Positions 15,632 through 55,099 are shown, numbered from the stretch's first letter. The stretch is 64,000 nt of DNA from Mobula hypostoma (GCF_963921235.1 NC_086119.1:26598001-26662000); one strand, 5' to 3'. Numbers and translations: made by a program. Notes: generated by a model from the letters alone, not told the origin.

Positions 15632-15900
15632 GAACCCGCATTTACCACCTTGTCTGGCAGCTCATTCTTCACACACAGAGTGGTGGGAGTGTGGAATGAG
15701 CTGCCAGACGAGGTGGTAAATGTGGGTTCTTTTTTAACATTTAAGAATAAATTGGACAGATACATGGATGGGAGGTGTATGGAGGGATATGGTCCATGTG
15801 CAGGTCAGTGGGACGAGGCAGATAAATGGTTTGGTACAGCCAAGAAGGGCCAAAAGGCCTGTTTCTGTGCTGTAGTTTTTCTATGGCTTCTATGGTTCTA
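15632..15900 (+). mobile_element. Short young CR1 3' end with a 36-bp 5' inverted duplication
   Basis: FFTHRVVGVWNELPDEVVNVGS...LDRYMD and (CTATGGTT)n tail; 15632-15667 is the reverse complement of 15694-15729 (34/36). Confidence 0.9.
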
Positions 15901-17364
15901 ACAGATACGTAGATAGATTAGGGAAAGGTGTAAAACCAGCAAGGACTTTAACTTCCCCAATATAGACTGGGACCTCCTTAGTGCAAGAGCTCTAGACAGG
16001 GAAGGGCCATACTACAACTGGTGTTGGGTAATGAGCTTGATTGGGTGACTGATCTTTCTGTGGGAAGACAGTTAGGGAACAGTGATCACATGTCCTTAAG
16101 TTTTAAAGATAGCTTTAAAGTATGAGCATTTCAGAAGAATGTTAAATTGGACCGGGACAAATTACAAGAGTGTTAGGGATAGTCAATTGGAAAGAGTTGT
16201 TTTTAGACAAGTCCACATCTGACATGAGGAGGGTGTTTGAAGGCCAACTGCAAAGACCACAGATACAGGTATGTTCCAATCAGAAGGAAAGACAAAGATG
16301 GTAAGATAAGGGAGAGAGGCTACAGTCAAACAGTTCTCAAGGATGATAAAAAAAAAGCTAGAAATGAAATCAATAAGGGAATTATAAAAGCCAAGAAGGG
16401 CCATGGAAAGACTTTGGCAAGTAGGATCAAAGAGAACCCCAAGGCATTCTATATGAAGATCACAAGAAAGAGGATACTAGAGAGAGGGTTGGAACTCGAA
16501 ACATAAAAGGAGGATTGTATCCTTGGAAGTAGAGAATGTGGGTGAGGTCCTAAATGAGCAATTTGTATCAGTATTCATTAAGGAGAAGGACCTGAAGGAT
16601 GGGGAGATCAGTGTGGAGTGTCCTCATTTGCATTTCAAGATAGAGGAGGAGGAAGAGTTAGTTCTCTTAAAGAACATTAAAATTAAAAATGTCCCAGGGA
16701 TGAAATATACTCGAGTTTATTGAGGGAGGAAAGAATTGAGATTTCTGGGGCCTTAACCAATATTTTTCTGTGCTGTCTAGCCATAGGCAAGGTCCTAGAG
16801 TACTGGTGAGTAGATCATTTTGTTGCATTTTTCAAGAAAGGAAATAAGAATAATACTGGAAAATATAGTCCCTTGGGTCTCATCTAAGTGCTAAGGAAGT
16901 TACTGGAGAGGATTTATGAGTATTTGAAAACCCATAGCCTAGTTAAGGATATACAGCTTGGCTTTGTGTGGGGAAAATCATGCCTTACTAACTTGATTGA
17001 GATTTTGGAGGAGCTGCTGAAGGTGATTCATGAAGGTAGAACTGTGGTTGTTGTCTACATTGATTTCAGTAAGATATTGCATAAGGTCCTTCATGGAAGG
17101 CTCGTTCAGAAAATTAAGATATATGGGAAATGTTACATGGGCAAGTCAGTTTGTAATAGGTATGTAGACAGGTGGGATAGTAAGTTTGCAGATGATATGA
17201 AAAAGATTGATGGATATTGTAGAAGACTGGCAAAGGATAGAGCAGTATAGAGATCAGTTGATGATATGTGTGGAAAGATAACAGATGTAGTTGAACGTGG
17301 CTAAACATGAAATATTTCACTTTGGGAGATCAAATGTAAAGATACACTGTTAAATGGCAAACTT

Positions 17365-18132
17365 TAAAGTTCAAAGTAAGTTCATTATCAAATACATGTA
17401 TGTCATCATATACAACCCTGAGATTCACTTACTTGTGGACATACTCAATAAATCCAAAATAGACTAATAACCATAATAGAATCAATGAAAGACTGCACCA
17501 GCTTGGACATTCAACCAGTGTGCGAAAGGAAACACCATCAAGCTGTGCAAATACAAAAAGAAAGAAATAATAATAAATAAGCAACAGATATGAAGAATAT
17601 GAGATGAAGAGTCCTTAAGAGTGAGTCCGTAGATTGTGGGAACATTTCAATGATGAGGCAAGTGAACTAGAGTGAAGTTGCCCCTTTGGTTCAAGAGCCT
17701 GATGGTTGAGGGGTTAGAACTGTTCATGAACCTAGTGGTGTGAGTCCTGAGACTCCTGTACCTTTTTCCTGATGGCTGCAGTGAGGAAAGAACATGTCCT
17801 GGGTGTGGGGATCTCTGATTATGGATGCTGCTTTCCTGAGACTGTGTTTCGTGTAGATGTGCTCAATGGTGGGAAGGGCTTTACCTGTGATGGACTGGGC
17901 CATATCCACTACATTTTGTAGGATTGTCCATTCAAGGGCATTGGTGTTTCCATACCAGATGTGATGCAGCTAGTCAATATACTCTCCACTACACATCTAT
18001 AGAAGTTTGTCAAAGTTTTAGATGTCATGACGAATTTTCACAAACTCCTGAAGAAGAAGAGGCACTGCTGTTCTTTCTTCATAATTGTACTAACGTGCTG
18101 GGCCTAGGACAGGTCCTTTGGGGAATTTAAAG
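17365..18132 (-). mobile_element. Rex1/Babar-type LINE 3' fragment nested in CR1
   Basis: Antisense ORF 17724-17909 (AQSITGKALPTIEHIYTKHSLRKAASIIRDPH); gataatgaac + (TTTGAAC)-like tail. Confidence 0.85.
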
Positions 18133-18705
18133 TTCCCATAACAATTCCGTGAACAGTATTGATGTGCAAATGGATGTTAGTATCCATGCCCGTAGCTTCT
18201 GGAAAATGGCTACAGGTGATGATGGAAGGTGGGGGGAGGGGGTTAAAGATATATGACGTGCTTGCCTTCATTAGTGGAAGAAGTACAGGCATCAGTAAGT
18301 TATGTAGTAGTTTTATAAAACTCTAGTTAGACCACATATGGAATATTGCATTCTGGTCTGACTGCCCTATTATTGGAAGGATATCAAGGCTTTGAGAGGG
18401 TGCAGAAGATTTTTACCATGATGCTTCCTGGATTAGAGAAAAGACTTGTGGTGTTTTCTCTGGAGCTCTGGAGGCTGAAGGGAGATCTGATAGAGTTTTA
18501 TAAGGTTATGTGGCACAGATAGATAAGATAGCCTATCTTTTTCTCACAGAGTTGAAATATTTAGTACTCAAGGGCATGTAGTTAAGCTGAGAGGGGGCAA
18601 GTTCAAATATATTGTGTGAGCAAGTATTTTTGTGTAGGGTGATAGATGACTGAAATGTGGTAGTGGAGGAAGATATGATGGAGGCATTCAAAAGGCTCTT
18701 AGATA

Positions 18706-19743
18706 GGTTGCTGGTTACTAGTGGTGTTCCGCAGGGGTCGGTGTTGGGGCCGCTTCTTTTTACAATGTATATCGATGATTTAGATTATGGATTAAATGGT
18801 TTTGTGGCTAAATTTGTGGATGACACCAAGATAGGTGGAGAATCAGGAAGTGTTGAAGAAACGGAAAGGTTGCAGAGAGACTTGGTCAGTTTAGGAGAGT
18901 GGGAAAAGAAATTGCAGGTGAGATACAATGTTGAGAAATGTACAGTTGTACATTTTGGAAGAAGAAATAATCAGGCAGATTATTATTTAGATGGGGAGAA
19001 AATTCTAAAATCAGAAGTGCAAAGGGACTTGGGAGTCCTCATGCAGGATACCCTAAAGGTTAACCACCAGGTTGGTCGGCAGTAAGGAAAATGAATGCTA
19101 TGTTGACATTCATTTCAAGAGGTGTAGTGTCCAAGAATAAGGAGGTGTTGATGAGACTCTATGGGGCACTGGTGAGACCTCATTTGGAATACTGTGTACA
19201 GTTTTGGGCCCCCTATCTTAGAAGGGATGTTCTGATGTTGGAAAGAGTTCAGAGAAGATTTACGAGGATGATTCCTGGAATGCAGAGGCTAACATATGAG
19301 GAGTGTTTGTTGGCTCTTGGACTGTATTCATTAGAGTAGAGAAGAATGAGAGGGGATCTCATAGAAACATTTCGAATGTTGAAAGGGTTGGACAGAGTAG
19401 ATGTGGAAAGGCTGTTTCCCTTGGTGGGTGAGTCCAGGACAAGAGGCTACAGTCTTATAATTAGAGGGTACCCGTTTAAAACAGAGATGAGGAGAAATTT
19501 TTTTAGCCAGGGGTTTGTGGATTCATGGAATTCGTTGCCACATACAGCTGTGGAGGCCCAATCATTGAGGGTGTTTAAGGAGGAGATTTATAGGTATCTA
19601 ATTAGTCAGGGTATCAAGGGATATGAGGAAAAAGCCGGAAATTGGAACTAGACGGGAGAATAGTTTAGCTCATGGTGGAGTGGCAGAGCAGACTCGATGG
19701 GCCGAATGGCCTACTTCTGCTTCTTTGTCTTGTGATCTTGTGA
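18706..19743 (+). mobile_element. CR1 RT 3' half (younger) nested in old CR1
   Basis: VTSGVPQGSVLGPLLFTMYIDDL, KFVDDTKIGG and RPHLEYCVQFWAP motifs; (TCTTGTGA)n tail; a few stops/frameshifts. Confidence 0.95.
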
Positions 19744-20140: not shown

Positions 20141-20335
20141 TTCTGCAGATGCAGAATAGCACACATAAAATGCTGAAGGAACTCAGCAAGTCAGACAGCA
20201 TCTTGGAGACAAATTAGGACTGTCCTCTTGTTGGGTGTCAGCCCAAAACATCAGCTGTTTATTCCCCTCCATAAATGCTGCCTGACTTGCTGAATTTCTT
20301 TCTTCCTTCCTTCTGCATTTTGTGTCTGTTGCTAA
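20141..20335. mobile_element. Palindromic Penelope pseudo-LTR mini-element
   Basis: aaaatgctgaaggaactcagcaagtcagacagcatc ... atgctgcctgacttgctgaatt...gcattttgtgt in inverted orientation. Confidence 0.75.
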
Positions 20336-25150: not shown

Positions 25151-25924
25151 AGTTTATTGCTATAACCAGATTGTGTTCATCAACATATTTCAAGAAGTAA
25201 ATAAATGAAGAAGCAGTTGAAATGCTGTTGTGATGGTGGATTGAGTTTTATTGAGGTAGATATATTGACCCTGATATAAACGGAACTCACTGCTGTCCTT
25301 TTCTGAGTAGGCAGTCAGTGCCTCTGTAAACGGCTCAACCAGAGGACGTGGTAGGCAGTGAGGGTACATTAATTCACACACAGGACTTCCAGAGAATGTT
25401 CCTTGGATCATTATTGGCAACAAGACTTTGAGTTAGCATTTGGATTAGCTGATTCATTGTCAGTGGATTGTGAGAAGGAAGGAAATTATTACAAATAAAA
25501 ATTACTGGGAGTACAGAGCAGTGAGGCAAGAAAGGGATGCTTGACTGTCATGAGCAGAGGAGGGAGACAGAATACTGTAATTCCAATATGATTTGCAACT
25601 CTACCTGGTTCAGTGAGTAGTCAAAAATTCATAGAATACCTCCACAACTACTAGGCTACAATCAATGTTTCTGTGGCTGGCAAATTAGTGGCCCATCTTT
25701 GTTCTGCATCTGAGCATCTAAGAAGCAGATGCTGCCCACTTTCTGTGTGCAGCCAGCCCAGACACGAATGCCACAACAGTGGGGTGTCAAGGGCCAAACA
25801 AGGAACCAAGAGAAAAAATGGAAGCGGGGAGGGAATGCTGAGTTGATAGGGATAGTTTTCTGACTGTATCCTAATTGGAGGAATCCAGTGAAGTGCAAGG
25901 ACAAAGAAGAAAATAATCTTGGAG

Positions 25925-27935
25925 TTCAAAGTTCAAAATAAATCCACTATCAATGTACACATAAGTCACTATTTAAAACACTGATATTTGTTTTCTTGTG
26001 GGCATAATCCATGAACCATAATAGAATCAATGAAAGACTGTACCCAACAGGATGGCCAAATAATCAATCCACAAAAGACACAAAACTGTGCAAATATAGA
26101 AGAAAAAAAAGAAATAATAATAAATAAATAAACAATAAATATCAAGAACATGATATGAAAGTGTCACAATGGGGTCGCTGGTAGCAGACCCAAATGCAAG
26201 ACACAGACACTGAAGTACAAGGAACAGGACTTGACTAGAGTAGGGACGTGACAGGATACAGACAGGGAACCCGGACAAGGAACTATGCACTAGGAGCCTG
26301 GGCTTGGGCTCTGAGCCAGTGACTGGACAAGGACCCAGAACCTGGGTCTTGCCTCAGGCTAGGGTTCCAGAACCAGGCAAGGACATGAGATGACTACAGG
26401 ACAGGCCATGGCTGGGGTTTTGGTCTTGAGGCATGGAGGCTGGGGTCTCCAGGCTTGGGTTCTTGGAGCTTGGCTTGGGATCCTCAAGGCTTGGGTTCTT
26501 GGAGCTTCCCCTGGGCAGGACACGGAACTCCTGGGCAGGACAAAGAACTTCACCCCATGGAGGCAAGGACAGGGAGGGACAGACCCAACCACAGGGTAAC
26601 GGCATATGGCCTGCTTACCCGACAGAGGCAAGGGACAGGAAGGGACAGAACCAACTACAGAGTAACAGCAATTACAGCCTGGCTTACCCAACAGAGGCAA
26701 GGACAGGAAAGGAGCTCAATCCAGGGTGGTTCTGAGTCTCGGAGCAGCCAGCAACCTTGGCTGGCTACAGAAACAGCCAAGTCCATACCACCATGACTGC
26801 TCCAACAAGTGGCAACAAGGCTCCATGAAGCAGTGGTCCTCCAACCAGGCCTAGAGATCACAAATTGTTTCACTAGCCTTCCATCAGCAGATTGCTCCAA
26901 GGGGGACTGACAAGACAAACCAGCAGCTCACACTCAATCCCAAGGCTACTTATATTCCAAGCCCCAAGATGGGAATCAAGTGCCTATGCTTAACTCAATC
27001 AAAACAAGGGACAGCTGGAATACCTGGAGTCCTGATACCAGGGACCGGACTGTGAACCGGAATGCAGACTTCACGGACTGGACCATGACAGAAAGTCCCT
27101 GAAAATGAGTCCACAGGTTGTGGCAACAGTTCAGTGATGGGGCGAGTGAAGTTCAATGAAGTTATCCTCACTGGTTCAAGAGCCTCATGGTGGAGGGGTT
27201 ATAACTATTCCTGAATCTGGTGGTATGAGTACTAAGGCTCATGTATCTTCTTCCTGATGGCAACAGTGAGAAGGAGCATGAGCTGGGTGGTGGGGGTCCT
27301 CGATGATGGATACTACTTTCCTGCGACAGTGTTTCATGTAGATGTGCTCACTGGTGGGGAAAGTTTTACCCATGATGTACTGGGTTGTATCTACTACTTT
27401 AAATAGGATATTCCATTCAAGGGCATTGGTGTTTCAATACCAGGCTGTGATGCAACCAATTAATATACTCTCCAACATACATCCATAGAAGTTTGTCGAA
27501 GTTTTAGATATCGTGCTGATATTTTGCAGACCTCTAAGGATGTAGAGGTATTGCAGTTCTTTCTTTGTAATTGCACTTATGTGATAGACCCAGGACAAGT
27601 CCTCTGAAATGATAACACTGAGGAATTTCAAGTTGCCAACGATCTCCACCTCTGATCACCCAATGAGGACTGGCTCATGGGCCTCTGGTTTCCTACTCCT
27701 GAAGTCAAGAACCATCTCCTAAGACTTGCTGACATTAAATGAGGTGTTGTTGCTATGGCACCACTCAGCCAGATTTTCAGTCTCCCTCTTACATGCTGAA
27801 TCGTCTCACCACCTTTGATTTGGACTATGACAATAGTGTCATTAGCAAACTTGAATATGGCATTGGAGCTGTGCTTAGTCTCACAGTCATAAGTATAAAG
27901 TGACTAGAGAAGGGGGTAAGCACACAGCCCTGTGT
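25925..27935 (-). mobile_element. Rex1/Babar-type LINE (RT C-terminus to 3' end), split by a solo LTR
   Basis: Antisense QGCVL.P, FKFANDT and KFLSVIISEDLSW..H...NFYGCMLESILIGCITAWY (ORF 27434-27649); (TTTGAAC)n tail at ~25925. Confidence 0.85.
26162..27090 (-). mobile_element. Solo LTR (~930 bp) with 5-bp TSD
   Basis: TGTCA...TGACA ends; GAAAG at 26157-26161 and 27091-27095; internal ~65-70-bp and ~19-bp tandem repeats; minus-strand start TGTCATGGTCCAGTCC is shared with the LTR at 43813. Confidence 0.9.
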
Positions 27936-28229
27936 TTTAGAAATATCTAAAACCAGAGAACAGAGAAAATTACCTCTGAGAATTTGAAACATTTTTAAAA
28001 TTCTGTTCATCAGATTTTAAAATTACGCAGAACAGGATAAGAAGTATACATGAGTATTTTCATAAGGCGTATCCTAGCTTACTTGTTTTAAACAGAGGTT
28101 TTAACCTAGTTAAATATTATAAGTTCATCTTGGGCTTCTTTCATGATGTTTAACAACATCCATGAGAAAGACTGGATAGGTGGGTAGTCTTTGCATAACT
28201 TAACTCCCCTATTAAAGTCCGTAAAACTA

Positions 28230-28800: not shown

Positions 28801-28849
28801 GCAGTGCCTTTTTTTTAAGCACAAGGTAAGTCTCTGCCATGTCTTATTC

Positions 28850-29660
28850 ACAGTGATGCAGCCAGTTCGAATGATCTCCATGGTACATCTGTAGAAATTT
28901 GAAGTACTTTTGGTGAAATGCTAAATCTCCTCAAACTCTCAATGAAATATAGCTGCTGTCTTGTCTTCTTTATAGCTACATTGATAAGTCGGGTCCATGT
29001 TGGGTTAGGTCCTCAGAGATACTGACATCCAGGAACTTGAAGTTGCTCACTCTCTCTACTTCTGATCCCTCTGTGAGGACTGGTGTGTGTTTCCTCATCT
29101 TACCCTTTCTGAAGTCCACAATCAGTTCTTTGGTCTACAGATGTACTGTGGAGACCATTCTAACTGGCTGCGTCACCATTTGGTATCGAGGGGGAGGGGT
29201 GCTACTACAACAGATAGACATAAGCTGAAGAGACTTGTAAACTTAGTCAGCTCCATCTTGGGCACTAGCCTCCCACCAGCATCCAGGACATCTTCAAGGA
29301 GCAGTGCCTCAGAAAGGTGACATTCATCATTAAGGACCCCCATCACCCAGGACATGCCCTCTTCTCATTGCGACCATCAAGAAGTACGGGAACCTGAAGA
29401 CACACACACTCAACAATTTAGGGATACCTTCTTCCCCTCTTCCATCCAATTTCTGAATGGACATTGGCCCAATGAACACGACCTCACTACTTTATTAAAA
29501 TTTTTATTTCTACACTACTTATTTAATTTAACTATTTAATATATTAATACACTTGCAATAATTCAGTTTTTTCCCTCTCATTACGTATTGCAATGTACTG
29601 CTGCTGCAAAAACAACAAATTTCACCACATATGCCAATGATACTAAGCCAGATTCTGATG
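28850..29660 (+). mobile_element. Rex1/Babar-type LINE with inverted 5' segment (28850-29134 antisense, 29135-29660 sense)
   Basis: Antisense part encodes TKELIVDFRK...FKFLDV.ISEDL...NFYRCTMEIIRTGCITV; sense part restarts at YRCTVETILTGCVTIWY and runs to a gattctgat tail. Confidence 0.8.
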
Positions 29661-31308: not shown

Positions 31309-31980
31309 TTAGATTAGATTATGAGGACACGCAGTCCTCTTTTATTGTCATTCAGCAATGCATGCATTAAGAAATGATACAATGTTCCTCCAGAATGATA
31401 TCACAGAAACACAAGGCAAACCAAGACTAAAAAAAACTGACAAAAACCACATAATTATAACATATAGTTACAACAGTGCAAAGCAATACCATAATTTGAT
31501 AAAGAATAGACCATGGGCACGGTAAAAAAAAGTCTCAAAGTCTCTCGAAAGTCCCATCATCTCACGCAGATGGTAGAAGGAAGAAAAACTCTCCCTGCCA
31601 TGAGCTTCCAGCGCCTCAAACTTGCCGATGCAGCACCCTGGAAGCACCCGACCACAGCCGACTCTCGAGTCCGTCCGAAAACTTGGAGCCGCTGACTAGC
31701 CCTCCGACACAGAGCATCGAGCACCATCTCTGCCGAGCACTTCGACCCCGGCCCCGGCAATAGGCAAAGCCGAGGATTTGGGGCCTTCTCCTCCGGAGAT
31801 TCTTGATTGCACAATAGCAGCGGCAGCAAAGTGGGCATTTCAGAAGTTTCTCCAGATATTCGTCCGTGCTCCTCACGTCTATCTCCATCAAATCAGGATT
31901 GTGCACGGCATCCTACTTACAAATATGATATCATTTCGGAGCGGCTGCGCGCGCTGCGTCGCGTCGCCATCTTCTCCTCC
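31309..31980 (-). mobile_element. ~670-bp non-autonomous retroposon, copy 1
   Basis: Minus-strand 5' end GGAGGAGAAGATGGCGACGCGACGCAGCG; 3' end gacaataaaagaggactgcgtgtcctcataa(TCTAA)n; colinear with 38322-39000. Confidence 0.85.
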
Positions 31981-36544: not shown

Positions 36545-37289
36545 TGAAGACAATTTGTGTATCTACTCTGAATGGCCCCTGTCTCTGGATACTTCACGCA
36601 GGGGAAGTACCATCCTCTTATCTATCCTCTCAAGCCACTGATGAATTTGGTACCTTTCAATTAAATTACCTCTCATTCTTCTAAACTCTTGAGAGTATAA
36701 ACCCTGCTTAATTTCATCTCACAGAACAATCCATATAATCCAGGAATAAATCTGATGAGCCTTTACTCATCCTTTGACAAGGGATTTCCGATGATATTCT
36801 CTTGCCACAAGTGAATAAATTCCTAAAAGTGTATTAATTTGTATCTTGCAAAATGACAATTCCAATCCAATATCTGCTCATGCTGTTACGAAGAAAAACT
36901 TGCTGTAAATAAAACTGTGACAGCTTTCATGAGAATACAGACAGATTCAACTGTACCACACATATAATAGATTGGTTACTGAAGCGAGCAACAGGATGCA
37001 TGTAAAGATATGCTTGCGATTATAAATCAGAACTGTTTCAAGACATTAATCGATTATTGCTGAAACAGAATGCAGGGCAATTAGTTGTGAAGTAACAATA
37101 AAAGTTATATAAATCTACCTTCTGGATACATTTGAGGAGTTTGAAAAAGTTGTGTTCAGGATAGATGATATTTTGCACACTGTTGTATATAATAAAATTA
37201 ACCTTGGTAGAAATTGATCATGTTTTTCAAAATATGTTTATGTATGTATTTTCAGACTTGGAGTTTTACTATACTTAAAGCAATGAAAT

Positions 37290-37631
37290 TGGATCTGCTG
37301 ATCCCCTGGGGTGTTCATGCACAACAGTCTCCAGAGTTTTCAGAGAACAGTGCAAAAAACAAAAAAAAAAATTCAATGAGCAGCAGTTCTGTGGGCAAAA
37401 ACACCTTGTTAATGAGAGAGTTCAGAGGAGAATGGCCAGATTAGTTCAAGTTGACAGGAAGGCAACAGTAACTTAAATAACCATGTATTACAACAGTGGT
37501 GTGCGGAAGAGCATCGCTAAATGCACAACATGACAAACCTTGAAGAGGATGGGCGACAGCAGTAGAAAGCCACAAACGTGCACTCACTTTATTTAGATAC
37601 ATTAAGTACCTAATTAAGTGGCCTCTGAGTG
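37290..37631 (+). mobile_element. Non-autonomous Tc1-family element (transposase N-terminal remnant and TIR)
   Basis: Encodes roughly ...SRVFREQC...QFCGQKHLVNERVQRRMARLVQVDRKATVT...; ends cctaattaagtggcctctgagtg-TA. Confidence 0.85.
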
Positions 37632-37656
37632 TATATTCGAGAAATGGATGTGGTGG

Positions 37657-38321: not shown

Positions 38322-39000
38322 ATTAGATTAGATTATGAGGACACACAGTCCTCTTTTATTGTCATTTAGTAATGCATGCGTTAAGAAATGATACAATTTT
38401 TTCCTCCAGAATGATATCACAGAAACACAAGACAAGCCAAGACTAAAAAAAAAATGACAGAAACCACGTAATTATAACATATAGTTACAACAGTGCAAAG
38501 CAATACCATAATTTGATGAAAACAGACCATGGGCACGGGTAAAAAAAATTCTCAAAGTCTCTCGAAAGTCCCATCATCTCACGCAGGCGGTTGAAGGGAG
38601 AAACTCTCCCTACCATGAGCTTCCAGCGCCGCAAACTTGCCGATGCAGCATCCTAGAAGCACTCGACCACAGTCTGACTCTGAGTCCATCCAAAAACTTC
38701 GAGACTCCGACCAGCCCTCCGACACCGAGCACCATCTCTGCCGAGCGCTTTGACCCCAACCCTGACAACAGGCAATAGGCAAAGCTGAGGATTTGGGGCC
38801 TTCCCCTCCAGAGATTCTTGATTGCACAGTAGCAGTGGCAGCGAAACAGGCATTTCAGAAGTTTCTCTAGATGTTCCTCTGTGCTTCTCACGTCCGTCTC
38901 CATCAAATCAGGATTGTGCATGGCCCCTATTTAACAAATACAATATCAATTCGGAGCAGCTGCCACGCTGTGTTGTGCCGCCATCTTCTCTTCCCCTCCT
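38322..39000 (-). mobile_element. ~670-bp non-autonomous retroposon, copy 2
   Basis: Colinear with 31309-31980 from the AAGATGGCG head to the (TCTAA)n tail. Confidence 0.85.
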
Positions 39001-39539
39001 CTAAAATTGTTAAAATTCAACAATTTTAAGATACCTATTTATTTTCAATTTATTTGAACAGCTCTCTGGTTGGTGTACGGATTGCTAAAGCTACCTTTAT
39101 ATTCCAACATATGATTTCCCTTCTTGAAAACAATCCATTTCTTTAATCAGTATTTACACAAGATTTTCACAAGTCAGTATCCAGTTACATCAGAAAATGA
39201 AATAAGCATGAATATTTTTATTCACTCTCAGTACACAATCAGAGATTTTGATATTTTTAAAAATCTATCAAAGTGATTTAATTGGAATCCTTACACTTGT
39301 CTATCAGTTTAGATTTTTTTCCCGAAATACTGCAATAAAACTCCACTTAGAAGGATAAATGTATGGAACAGATGGTTGAATATACTCAGGGGTACAAGTA
39401 GTCACACAATTCATCATATAGAACTTACTTCCCTGAGCCATAATTATTTTGTTCATGTTGATCAATAGACAGCCTGAAAAATGTTGCCCAACTCAGCAGA
39501 TCTTACTGCAGTGTATTGAACTGCCACTTAATGGATTTT

Positions 39540-41091
39540 TTTTTTGTTTTCTGCACCATTCGCTGTAACTCTAGAGACTTTTGTGTGTGAAAATGCCAGG
39601 AGATCAGCAGCTTCTCAAAAACTCAAACCGCCCCATCTGGCACCAACAATAATCCCATAGTCAAAGCCACAGATCACATTTCTTCCCCATTATTATACTG
39701 GTTTCCCCCATTATCCAAAGGCAGAGCGTTCCTATGAAATGGTTCGTAAGCCGGAATATCGTAAAGTGAATAAGCAATTACCATTTATTAATATTTTTGA
39801 GCATTCCAAGACCCAAAAATTAACCTACCAAATCATACCAAATAACACATAAAACCTAAAATAACAGTAACATATAGTAAAAGCAGGAATGATATGATAA
39901 ATACACAGCCTATATAAAGTAGAAATACTTTTCTGCAGTACTGACTAGCACAGCGAAAATCTCACGGCAGTGCTCTCGGCAGAAACACGGCGCAAGCGCT
40001 CTCGGCAGGAACACTCTCTCCAGTAACCTTTAAGCTATGAAGCTGCCAAATCATACCAAATAACACATAAAAATACACAGCCTATATAAAGTAGAAATAA
40101 TGTATGTACAATGTAGTTTCACTCACCAGAATCCAGAAGACTCCGATAAATTGCAGTTTTGTCACAGTTAAACACTTGCTTATATGAATAACCACCTTCT
40201 GTAAGTTATTTTCTTCAGTTCTGCTGGGAACTTCTTGGCAGCTACAGTATCAGCCGAAGCACTCTCTCCGGTAAAAGTTAAACTACGAAGCTACCCTCGC
40301 CTTAGAAACCACCCATGACTACCTTTAAATTCCACTTTCGCAACACTTTCATCACTATCGTCCAGTGCTTTCTGTTTCAGCTTATCAAAAAGACTGATTG
40401 ATATTTCCTTAAGTATAAGGAAACTTAACGGAACACCACGCTTTGTACACCCATCAATCCACTCAAGCAATAGACTTTCCATTTCATCCATTATTAGATG
40501 CCGACTAAGAGAAACCACTTTGCTACAAGCAGAACCAACAGTAACATCGGCAACTTTCAAAATTCTTTCTCTCTGTGTATAAATAGTGCAAATGGTGGAC
40601 GCAGGCAAGGTCAGCACGCGGACAATGTCCTTACTTGTTCACCGTGATCGAAACACTTAATTATGTCTAGTTTTACACTAAGTGTAACATCCTTACGAGC
40701 TCTCTTAGGCTTTTCCAATAGCTTAGAACTCATCTTGCTAAAGAATGCACAAAATAAATCAAGGTAAAGCACATGTTTAAGCAATGGCGGCTAGAATGCA
40801 GTTCCGGGGGAGGAGCTTGGCTGTTTGGGCGTGCGCTGCCTTTTTTCGTAACAGTGAAAACACCTTCTGTTAGTGAAAACAAGTAACTAATGTAGGTCTT
40901 TCGTAACAGCGAGGTGTCGTAAAGTGAACGTTCAGAAGGCGGGATCCACCTGTATTTGGTCTGAACATCTGAACTGGTTGGCCATGTATGCATGCCGTTA
41001 TGCATAGAGTTGCTGCCACAAGGCTGACTGATAGGATATTTGCATTAATGTGCAGTTGTCCAGGTGTGCCTAATAAAGTGGCTATTAAGTG
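39540..41091 (-). mobile_element. Tc1-family non-autonomous element split by a Tigger insertion
   Basis: 39540-39697 and 40955-41091 match the 47817-50223 element; TIR cctaataaagtggctattaagtg at the right end. Confidence 0.8.
39698..40952 (-). mobile_element. Tigger/pogo-family DNA transposon, internally deleted
   Basis: TA on both sides; imperfect CAGGT-type TIRs; ORF 40291-40617 (LPASTICTI...MESLLLEWID...FKGSHGWF) is a CENP-B-type HTH; frameshifted TGESASAD..AAKKFP follows. Confidence 0.92.
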
Positions 41092-41309: not shown

Positions 41310-41510
41310 GTTGGAAATCTAAGCAACACACACAAAATGCCAGAAGAACACAGCAGGACAGGCAGCATCTATGGAAAACAGTACAGTCGAAGTCTCGGCC
41401 CGAAATGCTGACTGTACTTTTTCCCATAGGTACTGCTTTGCCTTCTGAGTTCCTCCAGAATTTTGTGTATGTTGCTTGGATTTCCAGCATCTGCAGATTT
41501 TCTCTTGATT
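41310..41510. mobile_element. Palindromic Penelope pseudo-LTR mini-element
   Basis: ~41312-41389 is an imperfect reverse complement of ~41410-41486; the loop carries gtctcggcccgaaa, the 3' half of the hammerhead. Confidence 0.85.
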
Positions 41511-41911
41511 GTTTATAGATGGAAATCTACATGGGTGGAATCTATCATGAAAGTAGATGAAATGAAAATCTAAGATGAAAACAGAACTTAGTATCCGTGT
41601 GGAGAAGCAACTAATGCTAAATTCAATGTGTAGTCCTGAGGAGTAATTGCTTGGAAATAATAACTCTCCTCTGTCTGTGGATGCTACCTGCCCTGCTAAG
41701 CATCATTTAATCTGATAACCAATCCCGTTAAGTTTGATCTCTCCACAGATGCTGTTTGATCTAAAGGGTATTTCTACCATTCATTTCTGTTTCAAATTTC
41801 CAGTAGCTTCTACTCTTTGCATCTCACTGTTATAGCACATTCTCTTGGCTTTTGTCATCTCCTTAGTTCTCATTCATTATTAACTAAACAGCTCCAGTTG
41901 TATTGTGAGAC

Positions 41912-41950
41912 CTGTCCTGATGAAGGGTCTCAGCCTGAAATGTCGACTGT
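41912..41950 (+). ncRNA. Minimal hammerhead ribozyme-like motif in a Penelope terminus (element extends to ~42010)
   Basis: gtc-CTGATGA-agg(gtctcag)cct-GAAA-tgTC-gac: conserved core, stem I gtc/gac, stem II agg/cct; probable C>T CpG decay after GAAA. Confidence 0.65.
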
Positions 41951-46843: not shown

Positions 46844-47004
46844 CATTTGCTTACCCCACCACTGCTTCAACCTACAAATTAACCTTTTGGTAATCCTGTA
46901 TGAGGACTCCTAAGTCCCTTTGCACCTTAGAGTCACCTCATGTACAAACATTTCTGTACGTAGCATCACTTTATGTACATACAATCAATCTATGCATACA
47001 AGCA

Positions 47005-47162
47005 CAAACAGGAGAAAATCTGCAAATGCTGGAAATCCAAGCAACACAGACAAAATGCAGGAGGAGCATCCTGATGAAGCATCTTGGCCTGAAATGTCGA
47101 CTTTTTACTCTTTTCCATAGGTGCTGCCTGGCCTGCTGAGTTCCTCCACCATTTTGTGTTAT
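47005..47162. mobile_element. Penelope terminus with inverted 5' segment and hammerhead core
   Basis: Antisense acagacaaaatgcaggagga followed by sense cctgatgaagcatcttggcctgaaatgtcgac...ccattttgtgtt. Confidence 0.8.
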
Positions 47163-47816
47163 GGATATAAGCTATCATATGTATTTATATTTCTTGTGCT
47201 TTTTATTATTGCTTCTATTGTCTTATTTCGTTTTTTTTGTGTGCAGCATCTGATCTGCAGTAGAAATGATTTCATTCTCCTTTACACTCATGTACTGGAA
47301 ATGACATTAAACCACGTTGAAACTTGAAGCTATGGATGCAAAAGTCATCGATTGAGTTTTGCACTACGAGTTAGTTTTGCTTTTTATTCTTACGATACTA
47401 GATGTTAGTTGTGCCCCAGTGAAATACTTAATTTGGCACATGTGACATTGGTGGTACTGAAATGGTAGATTTTCCAGACCATCAAATGTTCCATCATTTT
47501 TAGTATTCGAGCATACTTTGATATTCACTTTTCAAAAATAAAACTTGCACAATCATATTCCTGTGAAGCTGCTAGGTTTAAAGGGAGTGCAGTAACCAGA
47601 ATCTTATGAGTGAGAAGGGGCAAAGAAACATCTCCTGGAGAGCCAGACTCTGATCCAATGGATTTTCAAAACAGATTAACAAGAAAATATCAAAGCTTTA
47701 CTGTATTAAAAACACAAATCCTCTAAATGAGTTGGAACTCGTATGAATTGTTGAGAAAAGATCATGTTAGTATTTTGAGTTTGCTGTTAATCTGTGTATA
47801 TTTAGACCTTGATTTA

Positions 47817-50223
47817 CACTTAGTGGCCACTTTATTAGGTGCCTCCAATCCATAATAAAGTGGCCACTGAGTGTGTATTTGTGGTCTTCTGCTGCTGTAG
47901 CTGATCCACTTCAAAGCCCGGCATGTTGTGCATTTAGAAATGCTGTTCTCCATACTATTGTAACACATGATTATTTGAGTTACTGTCATCTTCCTGTCAG
48001 CTTGAACTAGTTTGGCCATTCTCCTCCGACCTCTCTCCTTAACAAGGTGTTTTCACCCACAGAATTGCCACTCACTGTTGTTATTTTGTTTTTGCACTGT
48101 TCTCTGTAAATTCTAGAGGTTTGTCTGTGAAGATCTGAGGAGGTTAGCAGTTTTTGAGATTCTCAAACCACCCCTTCTGGCACCAATAATCATTCCATGG
48201 TCAAAGTCACTTAGATCACATTTCTTCCTCATTCTGATCTTTGATCTGAACAACCACTGAACCACTTCTTTTTCTTCTTCTTCTATTTCCGGCAGTTTAG
48301 ACGGATCTCGGCATATTACAGCCCTCTGCAGGATGTATAATTAATTATAGAACTTCAAGGAACTCAATTTCTCGAATACAACCTAGTCTCACATATAAAC
48401 TGAATAATAGACTCTTCAATCAGATGTTGATTCTCTTGATGGCCAAACAAAGATTTAATAGAAAACCAAAATAAATTTAAGCCAGACAGCCTCTTGAACA
48501 ACATGCTTCTTTCAATGTTGTATCGATTACAGCTCAGCAAAACATGCTGGACTGTCTCTGGACTACCACAGTCACATAATCCAGTAGGATGTTTTCCTAT
48601 TATCTTTAAATAATAATTTAGCCCACAATGCCCCAACCTAAGTCTTGTAAATTTTCACCATATCTCTATGACTTAAAAGGTAACAGTTTGAGACCTTTTT
48701 AACTAGTGGGTGACTAGAAAAATAATGCCTGCCCCTTAATTCATTTTCCCAATCCTCCTGCCACTTCTTCTCTATACTTTTTTTAATCCTACTTCTCAAT
48801 TCTGCTCTGCCTAGGGGAACTCTAATTTCTACTTGCCTGCTCTGTAAGGAAGACTTTGCAATGCCATCCACAATTTCATTTCCCTCCACCCCAGCATGCC
48901 CAGGTATCCATGAAAATCTAACTGCACAACCCATCTTCCCTACTCTAAACAACACTAAGAGAATCTCAATAACTATGTCAGGACGAGCTTTTGATTTACT
49001 CCCTTTTATAGACTCTAAGGCAGCAGCAGAATCTGAACAGATGATAACCCTATGTGGTCGAGAGTCTTCTATCCACCATAAGGCCCAGAGGATTGCTAAT
49101 AATTCTGTTGCAAAGACAGAAACTCCATCTGAAACCTGGTGACCAATCTTAACTCCAAGTTCTGACACATACATCCCAAATCCTGCCCTACTGCTCTCTG
49201 GGTCCACTGAGCCATCAGTAAAAATCTTCAGATAAGATTCCCATTTATTATTTAAATATTCATTTGTGATCAACGCTGATGAAATTACACTGCTTCCTTG
49301 AAGCTGAAAAAGGAGGAATAGGTCTACTTCTGGTTCTGGAAAGAGCCAAAAAGGGACGGGTGGCAGGCAAATTTGGTCAGCTATGTCTTCCTCAGTCAGT
49401 TTCAATTTCACAGCCCAGTTATTAACCAAATCTAACATTGGGTATCTTTTCATTTTACTTTGGCGCTCTGACTTCCCCTGCAAAAGACACTTCGATGGAC
49501 AGCTGTGATTGAATCCATTTAGTTTTACCCAATCCTGCAGGCCCAACTGAATTCATCTTAAATGTAGAGGCACTTCTCCCATCTCCGCACATAATGCCGG
49601 GACTGATGTTGTTCTAAAAGCTCCACAACAGAGTCTAAGTGCTTTGGACTGCACAGTGTCTAATCTTCCAAGCACTGCCGTAGCAGCAGAACCATAAGCA
49701 ATACAACCATAATCTATAACTGATCTAATCATACCTAGATATATTAAGTACATAGTTTCCCGCCCTGCTCCCCAGTCGCATCTAGCAATACTTCTCATAA
49801 CATTTAAAACTTTCTCACACTTTCCAATTGTTTTATCTATATGAACCCTCCAAGTAAGTCTTTCATCAAACTAGACACCTAAAAACTTGAATACCTTGAC
49901 TCTTTCTAGTGGAGAATCATATAGACACAATTCACAATCAGGAATCTTTCTTCTAAAGCCAAAAATCATGTACTTGGACTTAGAAGCAGAAATCCTGAAA
50001 CCCCATTTATTAGCCCAGTTGTCAACTGATCTTAAAGCCTTTTGTACCTGCCTTAATATATACTTGATGTTTCTTCCTCTTTTCCAGATTGCACCATCCA
50101 CTTAACCACTTAACCATGTCTTCATGGTTTTAAGTAGTGAGTTGCTGCCACATGATTGGCTGATTAGATAGTTGCATTAACAGGCGGGTGTATAAGTGTA
50201 CCTAATAAAGTGGCCACTGGGTG
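47817..50223 (-). mobile_element. Non-autonomous Tc1-family element (TA TSD), split by a LINE
   Basis: TIR CACTYAGTGGCCACTTTATTAGG at both ends with flanking TA; ORF 47762-48019 (MAKLVQADRKMTVTQII..YN...SISKCTT.RALK..YSSRRP) is a Tc1 HTH remnant. Confidence 0.92.
48268..50097 (-). mobile_element. I/Nimb-type LINE, 5'-truncated, with RT C-terminus, RNase H and CCHC
   Basis: DGAIW...FKFLGV; RSVIDYGCIAYGSA; RNase H IFTDGS...ATELLAI...ICSDS...WIPGHAGVEGNEIVD; CDCGSPETVQHVLLSC; (AAG)n tail; TSD CCACT(G/T)AACCACTT at 48254-48267 and 50098-50111; two stops and one frameshift. Confidence 0.93.
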
Positions 50224-51497: not shown

Positions 51498-52888
51498 ATA
51501 TTTCCTCTAGTTCACACCACACTATAGCCCACCCCACCGACCTCAAACAGGATCTGGCCCTCGAGACTAGGAGCAACCAAAAAATAACAAATTTGAGGAG
51601 AATCATAAAGAAAATAAGTATTTGACCGATATTAGTTTGTCTCCCAGAAAGAGTTCCTTCCATTATTTGTCACTATTATAGGATTCATGCTGATTATCTA
51701 GTTCCTGTAGTCTGAACATTTTCTGAGAAATCATCATCCTGCTTTAATAAATATCAAAGTACTGGAAATAAACAACATCTCCAGAGTTCAGGTGAAGAGA
51801 AAGTCAGAGCTAGCATTTTAGACTTTTTTTCCAACAGAAGCCATCAAATTCACAAACAATACTGCTCAGGTTTGACATAAGCTAAAGTTATAACTGTCAG
51901 AATCTATCACTATGTTCCAGATACAAGGCCTCGGCACTAAGCTCTCTTCACCTTGTTACCTAACTTGTGGGTACAGAGTGAAGAGGCTGGCTGACTTGCT
52001 GAATATCTTTAGTCTTTTCTACTTTATTTCAGATTTCTAATATCTGCAGCAATTTGCTTTTAGACCATTATATTTTAAATGCTTTGTTATGACAATATTG
52101 ACTTGTTCAAGTGGCAAACAGGTGCCTGGGTGCAAAATCATGAAGCATCAGTGTGTTAACAAATGTTTCCTGAGGTAATTGGACTTAACACCCTAATCAA
52201 TGCTACTTATTATGTCTGTGAGAAGCAATTCACCAAGGGAAACCTTAGACAACTTCCACAGTACAAAAAGCTGCAAATATTAATTAATGTAAAGATTACC
52301 TGTCAGCCATGGTCATTTACAGAGGTTACAGAAGTAACCCACTAATGGATTCAAATGCAGTTATTTCAGATCTTTAATGTAAAATTGATCGAGACCCTGT
52401 GTAACAAAATGAATATATTTTGTCTGTGGTTTAATGGGGTAGGTCTGTAATTGTTTGAATTTGCAAGTTTATTAGAAGAGTTTTATTTATATCAGCAGTT
52501 CAGAGGTTTGTTTGAAACCTTTGAACAGACAGTGTTTTCCATCAACATTCTTCATATTCTGAAATAAGCAATTTGAAATATAGTTAATGCAGGCCAGCTT
52601 GAAAAGACAACGTTAGTGAAGTAAGATAGAATGGTTAACACAATGGACGGGAATTAAAGCAGGCTGACATGTTGGCAGTCAGAGTTTAGCACTGTAGACA
52701 CTCCCATAGTTAGTGCAAGTCTCAAGAGGGCCTCATTACAGGCAGTCAGGCTTGGGCAATAAACACAGGCAGTGTCAGCCACACCCACATCTTGTGAATG
52801 CATTACTACTTTCACAATAGATACTGCAATCATTGATTTCAACAGCCTGTTAACATCTTCAATTATACATCCCACAACAAGGATTTGA

Positions 52889-53687
52889 GGCTACGTCCAC
52901 ACTACGCCAGATAATTTTGAAAACGAAGCTTTTTCTCTTCATTTTGACCTTCCATCCATGCTGAAATGGCGTTTTCAGCCACCGAAAACGGAGATTTTCA
53001 GTAACTAGAACGTACAATCATCACAGCGATATTTGATTCTGCACTTCGCAGGACCTAACAATTTCAGAACAGACGGCAATGAGACTGAAGCCAGAAGATT
53101 TAGAAATGTACTCACCAAATACTTTGACCTATAGCTTACTGAATAAATAACTATACTCACTTTGCCCTGTTTTCTGTCCTTGCTTGTATGAAGGTGCTTT
53201 ACCTATTTATGCAAGTACTTCTCTGACAATAGATGTGTAACAACCTAATGTAACATTGTATGGAAATACAAGATAACACTGATGCAGACATGTTTTATAC
53301 ATTTAACAAGGTGCTTTATTAATGCAACAGAGTTAGTCAGTTTTTCAATGTTCGTCGTCAGCCGGGTCATACTGTCCGTGAACTTCCTGTCGGTTGCCTC
53401 CATACGCTCCAGTATTTTTTTTAATTTTTAAGTCCTCCTGCATGAGAGCCAAGAGTAATTCCTTTTAAGTTTTTCTACTCTGTAACTGGACAAACGCGCA
53501 CCATGTATACCATTTCCTCTTCGCCTGTTTTCTGTGTGTCCTGCGCATGCCCAGTAGGAGGAGATTCGCCCAAATATCCGTCTAATGTGGACAGAGATAT
53601 TTTGAAAAACGCTTATTGTGGACGCCTATCGTTCTAACTCGAAACCGGCGTTTTTTCAAAATTATCCGGCGTAGTGTGGACGTAGCC
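52889..53687 (-). mobile_element. PIF/Harbinger non-autonomous element
   Basis: TIR GGCTACGTCCACACTACGCC(A/G)GATAATTTTGAAAA at both ends; 3-bp TSD TGA (52886-52888, 53688-53690); internal antisense coiled-coil-like peptide remnant. Confidence 0.93.
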
Positions 53688-53779
53688 TGAGTCTCATTGC
53701 CACTTTTGCAAGTCACCAAAACAATTATGCCACGGTGGCTTCTAATAATATGTTCATGAAAGATTAATAAATGTTTCTT

Positions 53780-54609
53780 CCTTTTCAATACTGTATTTTT
53801 ATTAAAATTATATAAATTGCATAAATACAAATACAAAATTCATAAGGATGCAAGTAGGTAATATGAATTACATAACATTTAAATCACAGTAATATGATCA
53901 CAGTATCCCCTATTCCAAATCAATCATGTAGAAAAGAAAGATTGAATTACAAAATGAAATAAAATAAAATTATTTTATTTTATTTTAAAAAAATCTACCC
54001 CCACTACCAAAATGAGCTGGTTGGTAAAAAAAAGATATACCTTATAATATTATAATAATAATGGCTCAGATCCATACTCTAATAACAGTTCAACAATTAT
54101 GAAAATAACTCAGAAAGGGTCCCCATAACATTAGAAAATCATGTTTAGAATCAGAAATCGAACAATGAATCTTCTCTAGATCAAGGCATAACATAACATC
54201 AGATAGCCATTGAACATGCTGAGCATGAGTGGGCGGTGTGGCCTCCTTCCACTTGAGCAAAATTCAAAGTGGTACATAGAGTTCATATGTCTAAAGACAA
54301 GTTCTCTTGTTTCTATGCAGATATTTCCCCTTACTGTGATAGATGTGCTAATGGAGTGGCCACACTAATTCATATGTTTTGGACTTGTCTGAACCTTGAA
54401 AAATTTTGGAAAGATGTATTTGAAACTTTTTCTGTACTTTTCAATGTTAGTTTTAAGCCCAATCCCTTTGACTGCCATGTTTGGTATTGTTGAGGATAGT
54501 ACAACAAAACTGAAGCCATCTAATTTGCAGGTATTGGCCTTTATGTCTCTTATGGCCAGGAGGGCAACCTTGATCAAGTGGAAGGAGGCCACCCCGCCCA
54601 CTCATGCTC
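53780..54609 (-). mobile_element. L1 3' end with 5' inversion and 14-bp TSD
   Basis: Plus strand ~54262-54609 encodes FKVVHRVH...CDRC...LIHMFWTC...KWKEATPPTHAQ; minus strand ~54260-53780 continues KWKEATPPTHAQ..WLSDVM..LDLEKI...WGPF plus 3'UTR; TSD AATAAATGTTTCTT at 53766-53779 and 54610-54623. Confidence 0.93.
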
Positions 54610-55099
54610 AATAAATGTTTCTTATCTAAATCGTATGCAAGAATGTTAGATAATTCTATTTTACAGAAAATGCATGGTCATTATCCAAAGTATAACTGAT
54701 AACTATCTCTGAAATGCTGTTGTATAATTGTACTATTTTCTTGAATATGCTTCCATGGTTTTGAGTAATTTTAATCTTATATTTGGACTGGGTTCACCTA
54801 AAGCCAATTGTGGTAATTAAGACTGGATATTACATGAACACCTTGTTAGAGATGTTCACCTCCCTCCCATTAAAAAAGATATAAGTTTTAGTCACTCTGT
54901 GGAGCATTTCTGGAGATTGCATTATCTGACTGTTATGAAGTTAACCAGCTTCTTTGCAAAAGTGGACTTAGATAAATTTGTGAACAAAACTAAATGAATA
55001 GGTATATTTCATGACTAGATTCTGAGAGTCACTCCATTAGATTAACAATCCTTTGTAATTCTTGTTCTGAGGGAAATGTTAGTGAGAGTTGTAAATAAT

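What the first reader, a model, noticed from the sequence alone, without database searches (positions are those of the whole stretch)
15632..54623. Recurrent 5'-inverted retro-insertions across unrelated clades (L1, Rex1/Babar, CR1, Penelope): possible host-level twin-priming-like pathway
Seen: four retroelement types in 64 kb share one geometry, a sense 3' end preceded by an antisense segment of the same element. In L1 (53780-54609) and Rex1 (28850-29660) the inverted piece starts at a point overlapping the sense piece by ~45 bp; in CR1 (15632-15900) it is a 36-bp fold-back; several Penelope ends carry inverted termini. Established: 5' inversion by twin priming is well described for mammalian L1, and inverted pseudo-LTRs are known for Penelope; to my knowledge it is much less documented for CR1/Rex1 or in cartilaginous fish. 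Inference: a host feature of second-strand priming or end joining, not one element's enzyme, may favour inversion with overlap duplication in this lineage and seed short hairpins genome-wide.
Basis: partly seen in the sequence, partly recalled or inferred. Interest (0 to 1): 0.78.

Follow-up and report, generated by a model that had tools for sequence, protein, structure and literature searches.

The report
Flipped front ends on ray retroelements
Several jumping genes in this stretch of a ray genome landed with part of their front end flipped, but they did so in three different, already described ways, so this gives useful non-mammalian examples and does not show a new host pathway.

Summary
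The features do not share one geometry.

- **L1 copy (53780-54609):** a textbook twin-priming product. It has a perfect 14-bp target-site duplication. The inverted piece covers ORF2 residues 1112-1227 and the sense piece covers 1214 to the end, a 41-nt overlap.
- **Rex1-like LINE (28853-29660):** the same layout with a 43-nt overlap, confirmed against an independent copy in the window. No target duplication is detectable.
- **CR1 copy (15632-15900):** a different layout. A 36-nt snap-back copy of its own 5'-proximal sense sequence is joined through 4 nt of microhomology, like the 'snap-back' junctions seen in R2 insertion assays.
- **'Penelope ends':** hammerhead-motif units joined head to head, each arm keeping its own 3' end. 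This is the published habit of Penelope-like elements.

In the three LINE events the arms differ mainly (9 of 11 mismatches) at decayed CpG sites, so each pair arose in one event.

A host-level pathway cannot be tested on 64 kb. The literature already reports that 5' inversion depends on both host and LINE.

This scan has noted twin-primed L1, CR1 and RTE copies elsewhere in this genome. The finding is a new member of a known kind, of modest interest.

The parts
53766..53779 (.). Left copy of the 14-bp target-site duplication of the L1 insertion
   Evidence: Exact 14/14 direct repeat with 54610-54623, at the exact element boundaries. The implied nick on the + strand is TTTCTT/AT, which is T-rich followed by A.
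53780..54260 (-). L1 sense 3' piece: end of ORF2 plus 3' UTR
   Evidence: The translation aligns to residues 1214-1265 of P0110, a 1269-aa protein with an endonuclease domain and a reverse-transcriptase domain. P0110 aligns end to end with human LINE-1 ORF2p, E 1e-180.
54261..54609 (+). L1 inverted 5' piece: ORF2 C-terminal zinc-knuckle region, antisense to the 3' piece
   Evidence: Aligns to P0110 residues 1112-1180 and 1176-1227. It has 653 relatives at E<=1e-3. The nearest ESM Atlas clusters carry zf-RVT, score 0.96. It overlaps the sense piece by 14 aa, or 41 nt.
54610..54623 (.). Right copy of the 14-bp target-site duplication
   Evidence: Its first base can also be read as L1 sequence, giving 1 nt of microhomology.
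28853..29133 (-). Rex1-like inverted piece (internal, 3'-truncated)
   Evidence: The minus-strand translation is the region upstream of the FYRCT motif. It maps to positions 287-554 of an independent Rex1-like copy (25900-28000, minus strand). Protein-level matches to copies at 27446-27655 and 56528-56653.
29134..29660 (+). Rex1-like sense 3' piece (3' boundary approximate)
   Evidence: Maps to positions 512-814 of the same reference copy, so the overlap with the inverted piece is 43 nt. Arms match 38/43, against 31-32/43 to other copies.
15632..15667 (-). CR1 snap-back piece: reverse complement of 15694-15729
   Evidence: 34/36 match to its own sense copy, against 14-24/36 to eight other CR1 copies. 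No other CR1 copy has this sequence at this position. ATTC at 15664-15667 is shared with the start of the sense piece.
15664..15900 (+). CR1 sense 3' piece (C-terminal FFTxRVV..WNxLP motif, 3' UTR, TTCTATG-type tail)
   Evidence: Homology to six other CR1 copies starts at about 15664. As RNA the hairpin folds at -82 kcal/mol, z -13.
41322..41515 (.). Head-to-head dimer of the ~130-bp hammerhead-motif (Penelope-type) unit
   Evidence: Further dimers lie at 20160-20335, 47004-47159 and 55092-55331. Solo units lie at 9153, 24944, 32688, 41911, 46713, 50901 and 58517. The CTGATGA..GAAA core is at 41917-41940 and 47071-47094.
10609..11111 (-). Contrast case: ordinary nested CR1 insertion, 3'-intact, inside a + strand CR1 copy
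   Evidence: Maps to CR1a reference positions 2235-2734, which include the 3' end. The host copy resumes on both sides (10351-10592 and 11114-11674).

Best explanation
The window holds three separate, already described outcomes of how the 5' end of a retroelement copy is finished. It does not hold one shared pathway.

(1) L1 and Rex1-like: twin priming. While the first cDNA is made from the element's 3' end, the other cut DNA end primes a second cDNA at an internal site of the RNA. The two cDNAs are then joined, which leaves an upstream segment inverted. Here the first cDNA ran about 41-43 nt past the second priming site, so that stretch is present twice, in opposite orientation.

(2) CR1: snap-back. 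The first cDNA stopped at the FFTxRVV codons. Its 3' end folded back, paired through 4 nt (GAAT with ATTC) about 26 nt away on itself, and copied 32 more nt of itself. It was then joined to the upstream DNA, which made a 36-bp hairpin.

(3) Hammerhead-motif units: the usual Penelope-like habit of an inverted, 5'-truncated copy placed against the 5' end, with each arm ending in its own 3' terminus.

Shown here: the layouts, the element coordinates, the L1 target duplication, and the near-identity of the arms. Inferred: the order of enzymatic steps.
For: L1:
- A single perfect 14-bp duplication flanks both pieces.
- An external full-length L1 ORF2 reference places the inverted piece at aa 1112-1227 and the sense piece at aa 1214-1265.

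Rex1-like:
- An independent copy places the inverted piece at 287-554 and the sense piece from 512.
- The inverted piece lacks its own 3' end, which independent LINE insertions keep. The nested CR1 at 10609-11111 shows that contrast.

CR1:
- Sense homology starts at 15664, and the inverted 36 nt matches its own downstream sequence 34/36, against at most 24/36 to other copies.
- ATTC is shared at the junction.

Arm mismatches: Rex1-like 4 of 5 and CR1 2 of 2 are CpG-decay pairs. The arms were therefore probably identical at birth.

Literature:
- Snap-back synthesis on the cDNA itself before 5' joining is seen in R2 insertions (PMC11204384).
- An inverted 5'-truncated copy at the 5' end is typical of Penelope-like elements and is attributed to their own endonuclease (PMC8557442).
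Against: - No target-site duplication of 5 bp or more could be found for the Rex1-like or CR1 events. Their outer limits, and a single-event origin, rest on layout and arm identity alone.
- Microhomology at the target/inverted-piece junction is 1, 0 and 0 nt. In human 5'-inverted L1 it is frequent (PMC2912911).
- Twin priming was thought unlikely for LINEs with about 5-nt overhangs (PMC4245944).
- The CR1 layout can also be drawn as twin priming with complete overlap.
- The arms of the hammerhead dimers are no more alike (50-74%) than random unit pairs (mean 66%). A single-event origin is therefore not shown for them.
- The 'Rex1' clade label was not tested against a named reference.
Confidence: 0.7

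Rival explanations
1. One reading: a host property of second-strand priming or end joining in this ray lineage makes 5' inversion with overlap duplication common for all retroelement clades.
For: - L1 and the Rex1-like LINE, from different LINE groups, show the same layout with nearly the same overlap, 41 and 43 nt.
- About 3 of roughly 17 LINE 3' ends in the window carry an inverted 5' part. That is near the 18% seen for human L1.
- Unchecked notes elsewhere in this genome list twin-priming-like L1, CR1 and RTE copies.
- Host dependence of inversion is documented.
Against: - The window shows three layouts, not one.
- The Penelope-type layout occurs in many phyla and is attributed to the element's own endonuclease.
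- Snap-back occurs with R2 protein in human cells.
- The window was picked because it shows these features, so its rate is biased.
- No clade-wise rates or outgroup genomes could be examined.
Confidence: 0.2
2. Chance adjacency or nesting: the inverted and sense pieces come from independent insertions of the same family.
For: - Nesting of CR1 in CR1 does occur in this window (10609-11111).
- An unrelated minus-strand CR1 fragment lies just after the 3' end of the long CR1 copy (36573-36782, 64% identity).
- No target duplication is detectable for the Rex1-like and CR1 events.
Against: - The inverted pieces are 3'-truncated internal segments. Independent LINE insertions are 3'-intact.
- Their coordinates overlap the start of the sense piece by 36-43 nt in an element several kb long.
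- The arms are 88-95% identical and differ mainly (9 of 11 mismatches) at CpG sites, while other copies are 39-74% identical over the same stretch.
- The L1 pair sits inside one 14-bp duplication.
- No remainder of a disrupted older copy lies on either side of the Rex1-like composite.
- Random placement gives P(3 or more) = 5e-6.
Confidence: 0.05
3. Later rearrangement or assembly artefact: the inverted duplications arose after insertion by replication template switching, or are fold-back chimeras of long reads.
For: Short inverted duplications can arise by fork template switching, and palindromic read chimeras exist (general knowledge). No read data could be inspected.
Against: - The arms carry 2-5 substitutions of the CpG-decay kind. 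Artefactual palindromes would be identical.
- The L1 inversion keeps an intact duplication at both outer ends.
- In each case the break falls exactly at the 5' end of a 5'-truncated LINE piece, which is where reverse transcription ends.
Confidence: 0.05

Closest known systems
Twin-primed (5'-inverted) L1 insertions of mammals (Ostertag and Kazazian 2001; about 18% of polymorphic human L1, PMC5668948)
   Same: The L1 copy has every structural hallmark. It has a 3'-intact sense piece and an inverted piece from the RNA segment just upstream. A short duplication lies at the inversion point, one 14-bp target duplication flanks the whole, and the nick site is T-rich followed by A. The Rex1-like copy has the same internal layout.
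   Different: The host is a ray. The L1 tail is not a long poly(A) run. Junction microhomology is 0-1 nt. The Rex1-like element belongs to a LINE group with short target duplications, for which cell-culture assays found no inversions (PMC4245944), and it shows no detectable duplication.
Snap-back 5' junctions of R2 insertions in human cells (PMC11204384; also mentioned in PMC12222951)
   Same: The CR1 copy carries, upstream of its truncated 5' end, an antisense copy of its own nearby sequence. This is what is expected if the cDNA 3' end primed on the cDNA itself before joining to upstream DNA.
   Different: It is a natural, old CR1 copy in a genome, not an engineered R2 transgene. The enzyme that made the snap-back (element RT or a host polymerase) is unknown.
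Complex tandem/inverted insertions of Penelope-like elements with hammerhead motifs in their terminal repeats (PMC8557442, PMC4209133)
   Same: The ~130-bp units carry the CUGAUGA...GAAA core. They occur as head-to-head dimers in which a 5'-truncated inverted copy abuts the 5' end. They come in a short form and a form about 32 nt longer, which recalls the 30-40-bp 'tail'.
   Different: I did not look for a Penelope reverse transcriptase or GIY-YIG gene in the window. Rfam hammerhead models do not score these minimal motifs. The arms are too diverged to show a single-event origin.

Membership tests
Twin-priming 5' inversion (L1 copy, 53780-54609) | Two pieces of one element in opposite orientation, the 3' piece in sense and 3'-intact | tested here: met
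   The sense piece reaches the ORF2 stop and the 3' UTR. The inverted piece is antisense to it.
Twin-priming 5' inversion (L1 copy, 53780-54609) | Inverted piece derives from the RNA segment directly upstream of the sense piece, with a small deletion or duplication | tested here: met
   On reference P0110 the inverted piece covers aa 1112-1227 and the sense piece aa 1214-1265, a 14-aa (41-nt) duplication.
Twin-priming 5' inversion (L1 copy, 53780-54609) | One target-site duplication flanks the whole composite | tested here: met
   14/14 at the exact boundaries; 0 of 600 random pairs reach 14.
Twin-priming 5' inversion (L1 copy, 53780-54609) | Microhomology between the target end and the element at the internal priming site | tested here: inconclusive
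   Only 1 nt is shared. Such microhomology is frequent but not obligatory in human data.
L1 clade | ORF2 with an apurinic-type endonuclease, a reverse transcriptase and a C-terminal Cys/His zinc knuckle | tested here: met
   The copy holds only the C-terminus. It matches aa 1112-1265 of P0110, which has Exo_endo_phos and RVT_1 and aligns to human ORF2p over 1224 aa at E 1e-180. A C-x2-C...H-x4-C motif is read. ESM Atlas neighbours carry zf-RVT.
Twin-priming 5' inversion (Rex1-like copy, 28853-29660) | Inverted internal piece from just upstream of the sense piece, with a small overlap | tested here: met
   Reference-copy coordinates are 287-554 (inverted) and 512-814 (sense). Arms match 38/43.
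Twin-priming 5' inversion (Rex1-like copy, 28853-29660) | One target-site duplication flanks the whole composite | tested here: inconclusive
   No repeat of 6 or more lies near the boundaries. The 3' boundary is approximate, and duplications of 3-5 bp expected for this LINE group cannot be told from chance.
Rex1/Babar clade | Reverse-transcriptase phylogeny with named Rex1 references; tail of short tandem repeats | not testable with these tools
   No named LINE library was available. Word searches were blank. ESM Atlas neighbours are unnamed chordate clusters. The family is distinct from the CR1 copies in sequence and tail. The label rests on my recollection of the C-terminal motif.
Twin-priming 5' inversion (CR1 copy, 15632-15900) | Inverted piece derives from RNA upstream of the sense piece | tested here: not met
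   The inverted 36 nt equals sense positions +30 to +65, wholly inside the sense piece.
Snap-back 5' junction (CR1 copy) | Antisense copy of the element's own 5'-proximal sequence between the truncated 5' end and the upstream DNA, with coordinates rising away from the junction | tested here: met
   4 nt (ATTC) are shared at the junction. The published description is in PMC11204384.
Penelope-like element termini | Hammerhead ribozyme motif in the terminal repeat | tested here: inconclusive
   A CTGATGA..GAAA core followed by GTCGAC is present. No Rfam hammerhead hit at E<=1. Cleavage was not tested.
Penelope-like element termini | Inverted 5'-truncated copy abutting the 5' end | tested here: met
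   Four dimers, each arm reaching its own 3' end in hammerhead-sense orientation, with different fold-back points.
Penelope-like element termini | Reverse transcriptase plus GIY-YIG endonuclease ORF | not tested
   No such ORF was looked for beyond the Pfam scans of the longest ORFs.

The most novel reading that the evidence does not exclude
In rays, twin priming may act on LINEs of several clades, including short-overhang CR1-group elements such as this Rex1-like family, at rates like those of mammalian L1. A characteristic ~40-nt overlap would reflect how far the first reverse transcriptase displaces the second cDNA. That would point to host control of how long the cut top strand stays available. 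It would also contradict the view that about 5-nt overhangs cannot twin-prime.
Probability: 0.2. Interest if true: 0.55.

Novelty: new member of a known kind. Interest (0 to 1): 0.35.

Why it matters
How the 5' end of a LINE copy is joined to the chromosome is the least understood step of retrotransposition. Natural scars are the main evidence outside cell culture. This window gives a clean L1 twin-priming scar, a Rex1-like scar of the same design, and a CR1 snap-back scar, all in a cartilaginous fish. These extend known outcomes to new elements and a new host, and each leaves a stable hairpin or an inverted repeat. If a genome-wide count showed high inversion rates across clades, host control of 5' joining could be tested by comparative genomics. 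From this window alone, that remains a hypothesis.

Tried and rejected
- **Longer Rex1-like inverted arm:** extending it beyond 28853 to reach a possible 8-bp repeat 57 bp upstream was not significant (168 of 500 shuffles scored as well).
- **Target duplications:** none of 5 bp or more for the CR1 event and nothing above chance (one 5-bp word) for the Rex1-like event.
- **Pfam:** scans of the short C-terminal ORF pieces gave nothing useful.
- **PDB searches:** the 78-aa L1 piece gave only a weak, correctly placed hit to human ORF2p (E 0.065). Two other L1 pieces gave nothing.
- **Word-based protein searches:** blank for both the L1 and the Rex1-like pieces. Given the length band, this says nothing about absence.
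- **Rfam:** the whole-window search gave only sub-threshold miRNA-precursor hits. A closer look showed that the CR1 hairpin hits about two dozen unrelated miRNA families, all below their thresholds. These are generic long-hairpin matches, not evidence of a miRNA.
- **Hammerhead dimer arms:** their identity is not higher than background.
- **Papers not held:** Ostertag and Kazazian 2001 and Ichiyanagi et al. 2007 could not be read. What I say of them beyond citing papers is from memory.
Full report
**Setting.** The window is dense in transposable elements.
- Reverse-transcriptase ORFs of several LINE families are present.
- I count about ten CR1-like 3' ends, five Rex1-like copies, one L1 fragment, an RTE-like reverse transcriptase, a LINE with RNase H, Tc1/mariner and pogo-type remnants, and about a dozen copies of a ~130-bp hammerhead-motif unit.
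- Notes of this scan identify the genome as a ray.

**L1 event.**
- The arms 54220-54260 and 54570-54610 are 41 nt long and 95% complementary. An exact 14-bp direct repeat sits at 53766-53779 and 54610-54623.
- A boundary scan finds that repeat at offset 0 on both sides. None of 600 random position pairs reached 14.
- The plus-strand piece 54261-54609 encodes a C-x2-C...H-x4-C knuckle. The minus-strand piece 54260-53780 encodes the last residues of the same ORF and a 3' UTR.
- Pfam and the word search left the 78-aa piece open, so I ran the exhaustive search. It found 653 relatives at E<=1e-3.
- One relative, P0110 (1269 aa), has an endonuclease domain and a reverse-transcriptase domain. It aligns with human LINE-1 ORF2p over 1224 residues at E 1e-180.
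- On P0110 the inverted piece covers residues 1112-1227 and the sense piece covers 1214-1265. The inverted piece is therefore the segment directly upstream of the sense piece, with 14 residues present in both.
- This is the twin-priming layout with a duplication at the inversion point.
- The implied first nick is TTTCTT/AT. One base is shared at the junction between target and inverted piece.

**Rex1-like event.**
- The arms 28853-28895 and 29134-29176 are 43 nt long and 88% complementary.
- The minus strand of 28853-29133 encodes the region ending in the FYRCT motif. The plus strand from 29134 starts at the same motif and runs through the C-terminus and a 3' UTR.
- Against an independent Rex1-like copy in the window (25900-28000, minus strand), the inverted piece maps to 287-554 and the sense piece to 512-814.
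- Two other copies match the inverted piece at protein level.
- The layout is the same as in L1.
- No target duplication is detectable. A tempting extension of the inverted arm is not significant.
- No remainder of a disrupted older copy lies on either side.

**CR1 event.**
- The tool reports 46-nt arms. Alignment with six other CR1 copies shows that sense CR1 sequence begins at about 15664, at the FFTxRVV codons.
- The true inverted piece is 15632-15667. It is the reverse complement of 15694-15729 (34/36), with ATTC shared at the junction.
- The inverted piece thus copies sense positions +30 to +65 and lies wholly inside the sense piece. Twin priming does not predict this.
- It is what results if the first cDNA ended at 15664, folded back, paired GAAT with ATTC on itself, and copied itself for 32 nt before joining upstream DNA.
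- Junctions of this kind, named snap-back, are described for R2 insertions in human cells. There the template is most often the cDNA itself (PMC11204384).
- As RNA the hairpin folds at -82 kcal/mol, z -13.

**Hammerhead-motif units.**
- The unit carries CTGATGA..GAAA followed by GTCGAC. This fits the minimal, dimer-dependent hammerheads of Penelope-like terminal repeats (PMC4209133).
- Four loci are inverted dimers: 20160-20335, 41322-41515, 47004-47159 and 55092-55331.
- In hammerhead-sense orientation each arm runs to its own 3' end. The inner ends are truncated at different points.
- That is the published Penelope-like pattern: an inverted 5'-truncated copy against the 5' end, attributed to the element's own endonuclease. 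A 30-40-bp tail at one end is also described (PMC8557442). The units here occur in a short form and a form about 32 nt longer.
- The arms are no more alike than random unit pairs, so a single-event origin is not shown for them.

**Chance and controls.**
- Random placement of the observed fragments gives 0.037 abutting opposite-strand same-family pairs per window, with P(3 or more) = 5e-6.
- That null ignores nesting, which does occur. The CR1 copy at 10609-11111 sits inside a plus-strand CR1 copy, but it keeps its 3' end as an ordinary insertion does. A further minus-strand CR1 fragment at 36573-36782 is only 64% identical to its neighbour.
- By contrast, the three flagged inverted pieces are internal. 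Their coordinates meet the start of the sense piece, and their arms are 95%, 88% and 94% identical, while other copies are 72-74% (Rex1-like) and 39-67% (CR1) identical over the same stretch.
- Four of the five Rex1-like mismatches and both CR1 mismatches are CpG-decay pairs. This implies identical arms at birth.

**Rate.** About 3 of roughly 17 LINE 3' ends in the window carry an inverted 5' part. The count is approximate, and the window was chosen for this feature, so it is not a rate estimate. Human polymorphic L1 show 18.2% (PMC5668948).

**Host-level hypothesis.**
- Yamaguchi et al. [quoted passage not shown] They saw none with zebrafish ZfL2-1 and argued that about 5-nt overhangs are too short (PMC4245944).
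- The idea is therefore in the literature. The Rex1-like case is a mild counter-example to the overhang argument.
- The similar overlaps in L1 and Rex1-like (41 and 43 nt) are suggestive, but they are two events.
- Other unchecked notes in this genome list twin-priming-like L1, CR1 and RTE copies. One L1 case was followed up, with an empty site in a related ray. These are leads, not support.

**Verdict.** The claim of 'one geometry' does not. The best reading is three known 5'-end outcomes side by side. Novelty is limited to new hosts and new element families for known scars.

Noticed in passing
window 47812-47878: A near-perfect palindrome inside a Tc1-like transposon remnant scores 58 bits against Rfam mir-9256 (E 1e-9, below the gathering score of 80) on both strands.
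   Followed up: no
window 31309-31980 and 38323-38994: Two direct repeats of about 680 bp, 87% identical and 7 kb apart, enclose the long CR1 copy and a Tc1-like piece. They may be the LTRs of an old LTR element that was later invaded.
   Followed up: no
window 58741-59365: A 625-bp self-complementary block (75%) with internal sub-repeats. Its translation resembles, from memory only, the C-terminus of a mariner transposase, so it may be a fold-back derivative of a DNA transposon. It lies next to a hammerhead unit at 58517-58651.
   Followed up: no
window 52888-52923 and 53653-53688: A 36-nt inverted repeat, 97% identical and 730 bp apart, just upstream of the L1 insertion. It looks like the terminal inverted repeats of a small DNA transposon.
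   Followed up: partly
window 13196-13706, 10609-11111, 36573-36782: Three CR1 pieces start at nearly the same element position (2210-2235 of the 2741-nt reference stretch). This could mean a ~510-bp non-autonomous CR1-tail element and not independent truncations.
   Followed up: no
window 48367-50101 (minus strand): A LINE remnant with an RNase H domain (Pfam E 2e-12) and a C-terminal Cys/His motif. It belongs to a different LINE group from the CR1, Rex1-like, L1 and RTE-like copies.
   Followed up: no
window 37295-37389 and 39518-39610: An inverted repeat 2.1 kb apart that matches the Tc1-like remnant at 47812-48233. These are probably the ends of a Tc1-like DNA transposon, unrelated to the retroelement inversions.
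   Followed up: partly
window 15630-15735: The CR1 snap-back hairpin hits about two dozen unrelated miRNA-precursor models below threshold. Long perfect hairpins of this kind can mislead miRNA annotation.
   Followed up: yes
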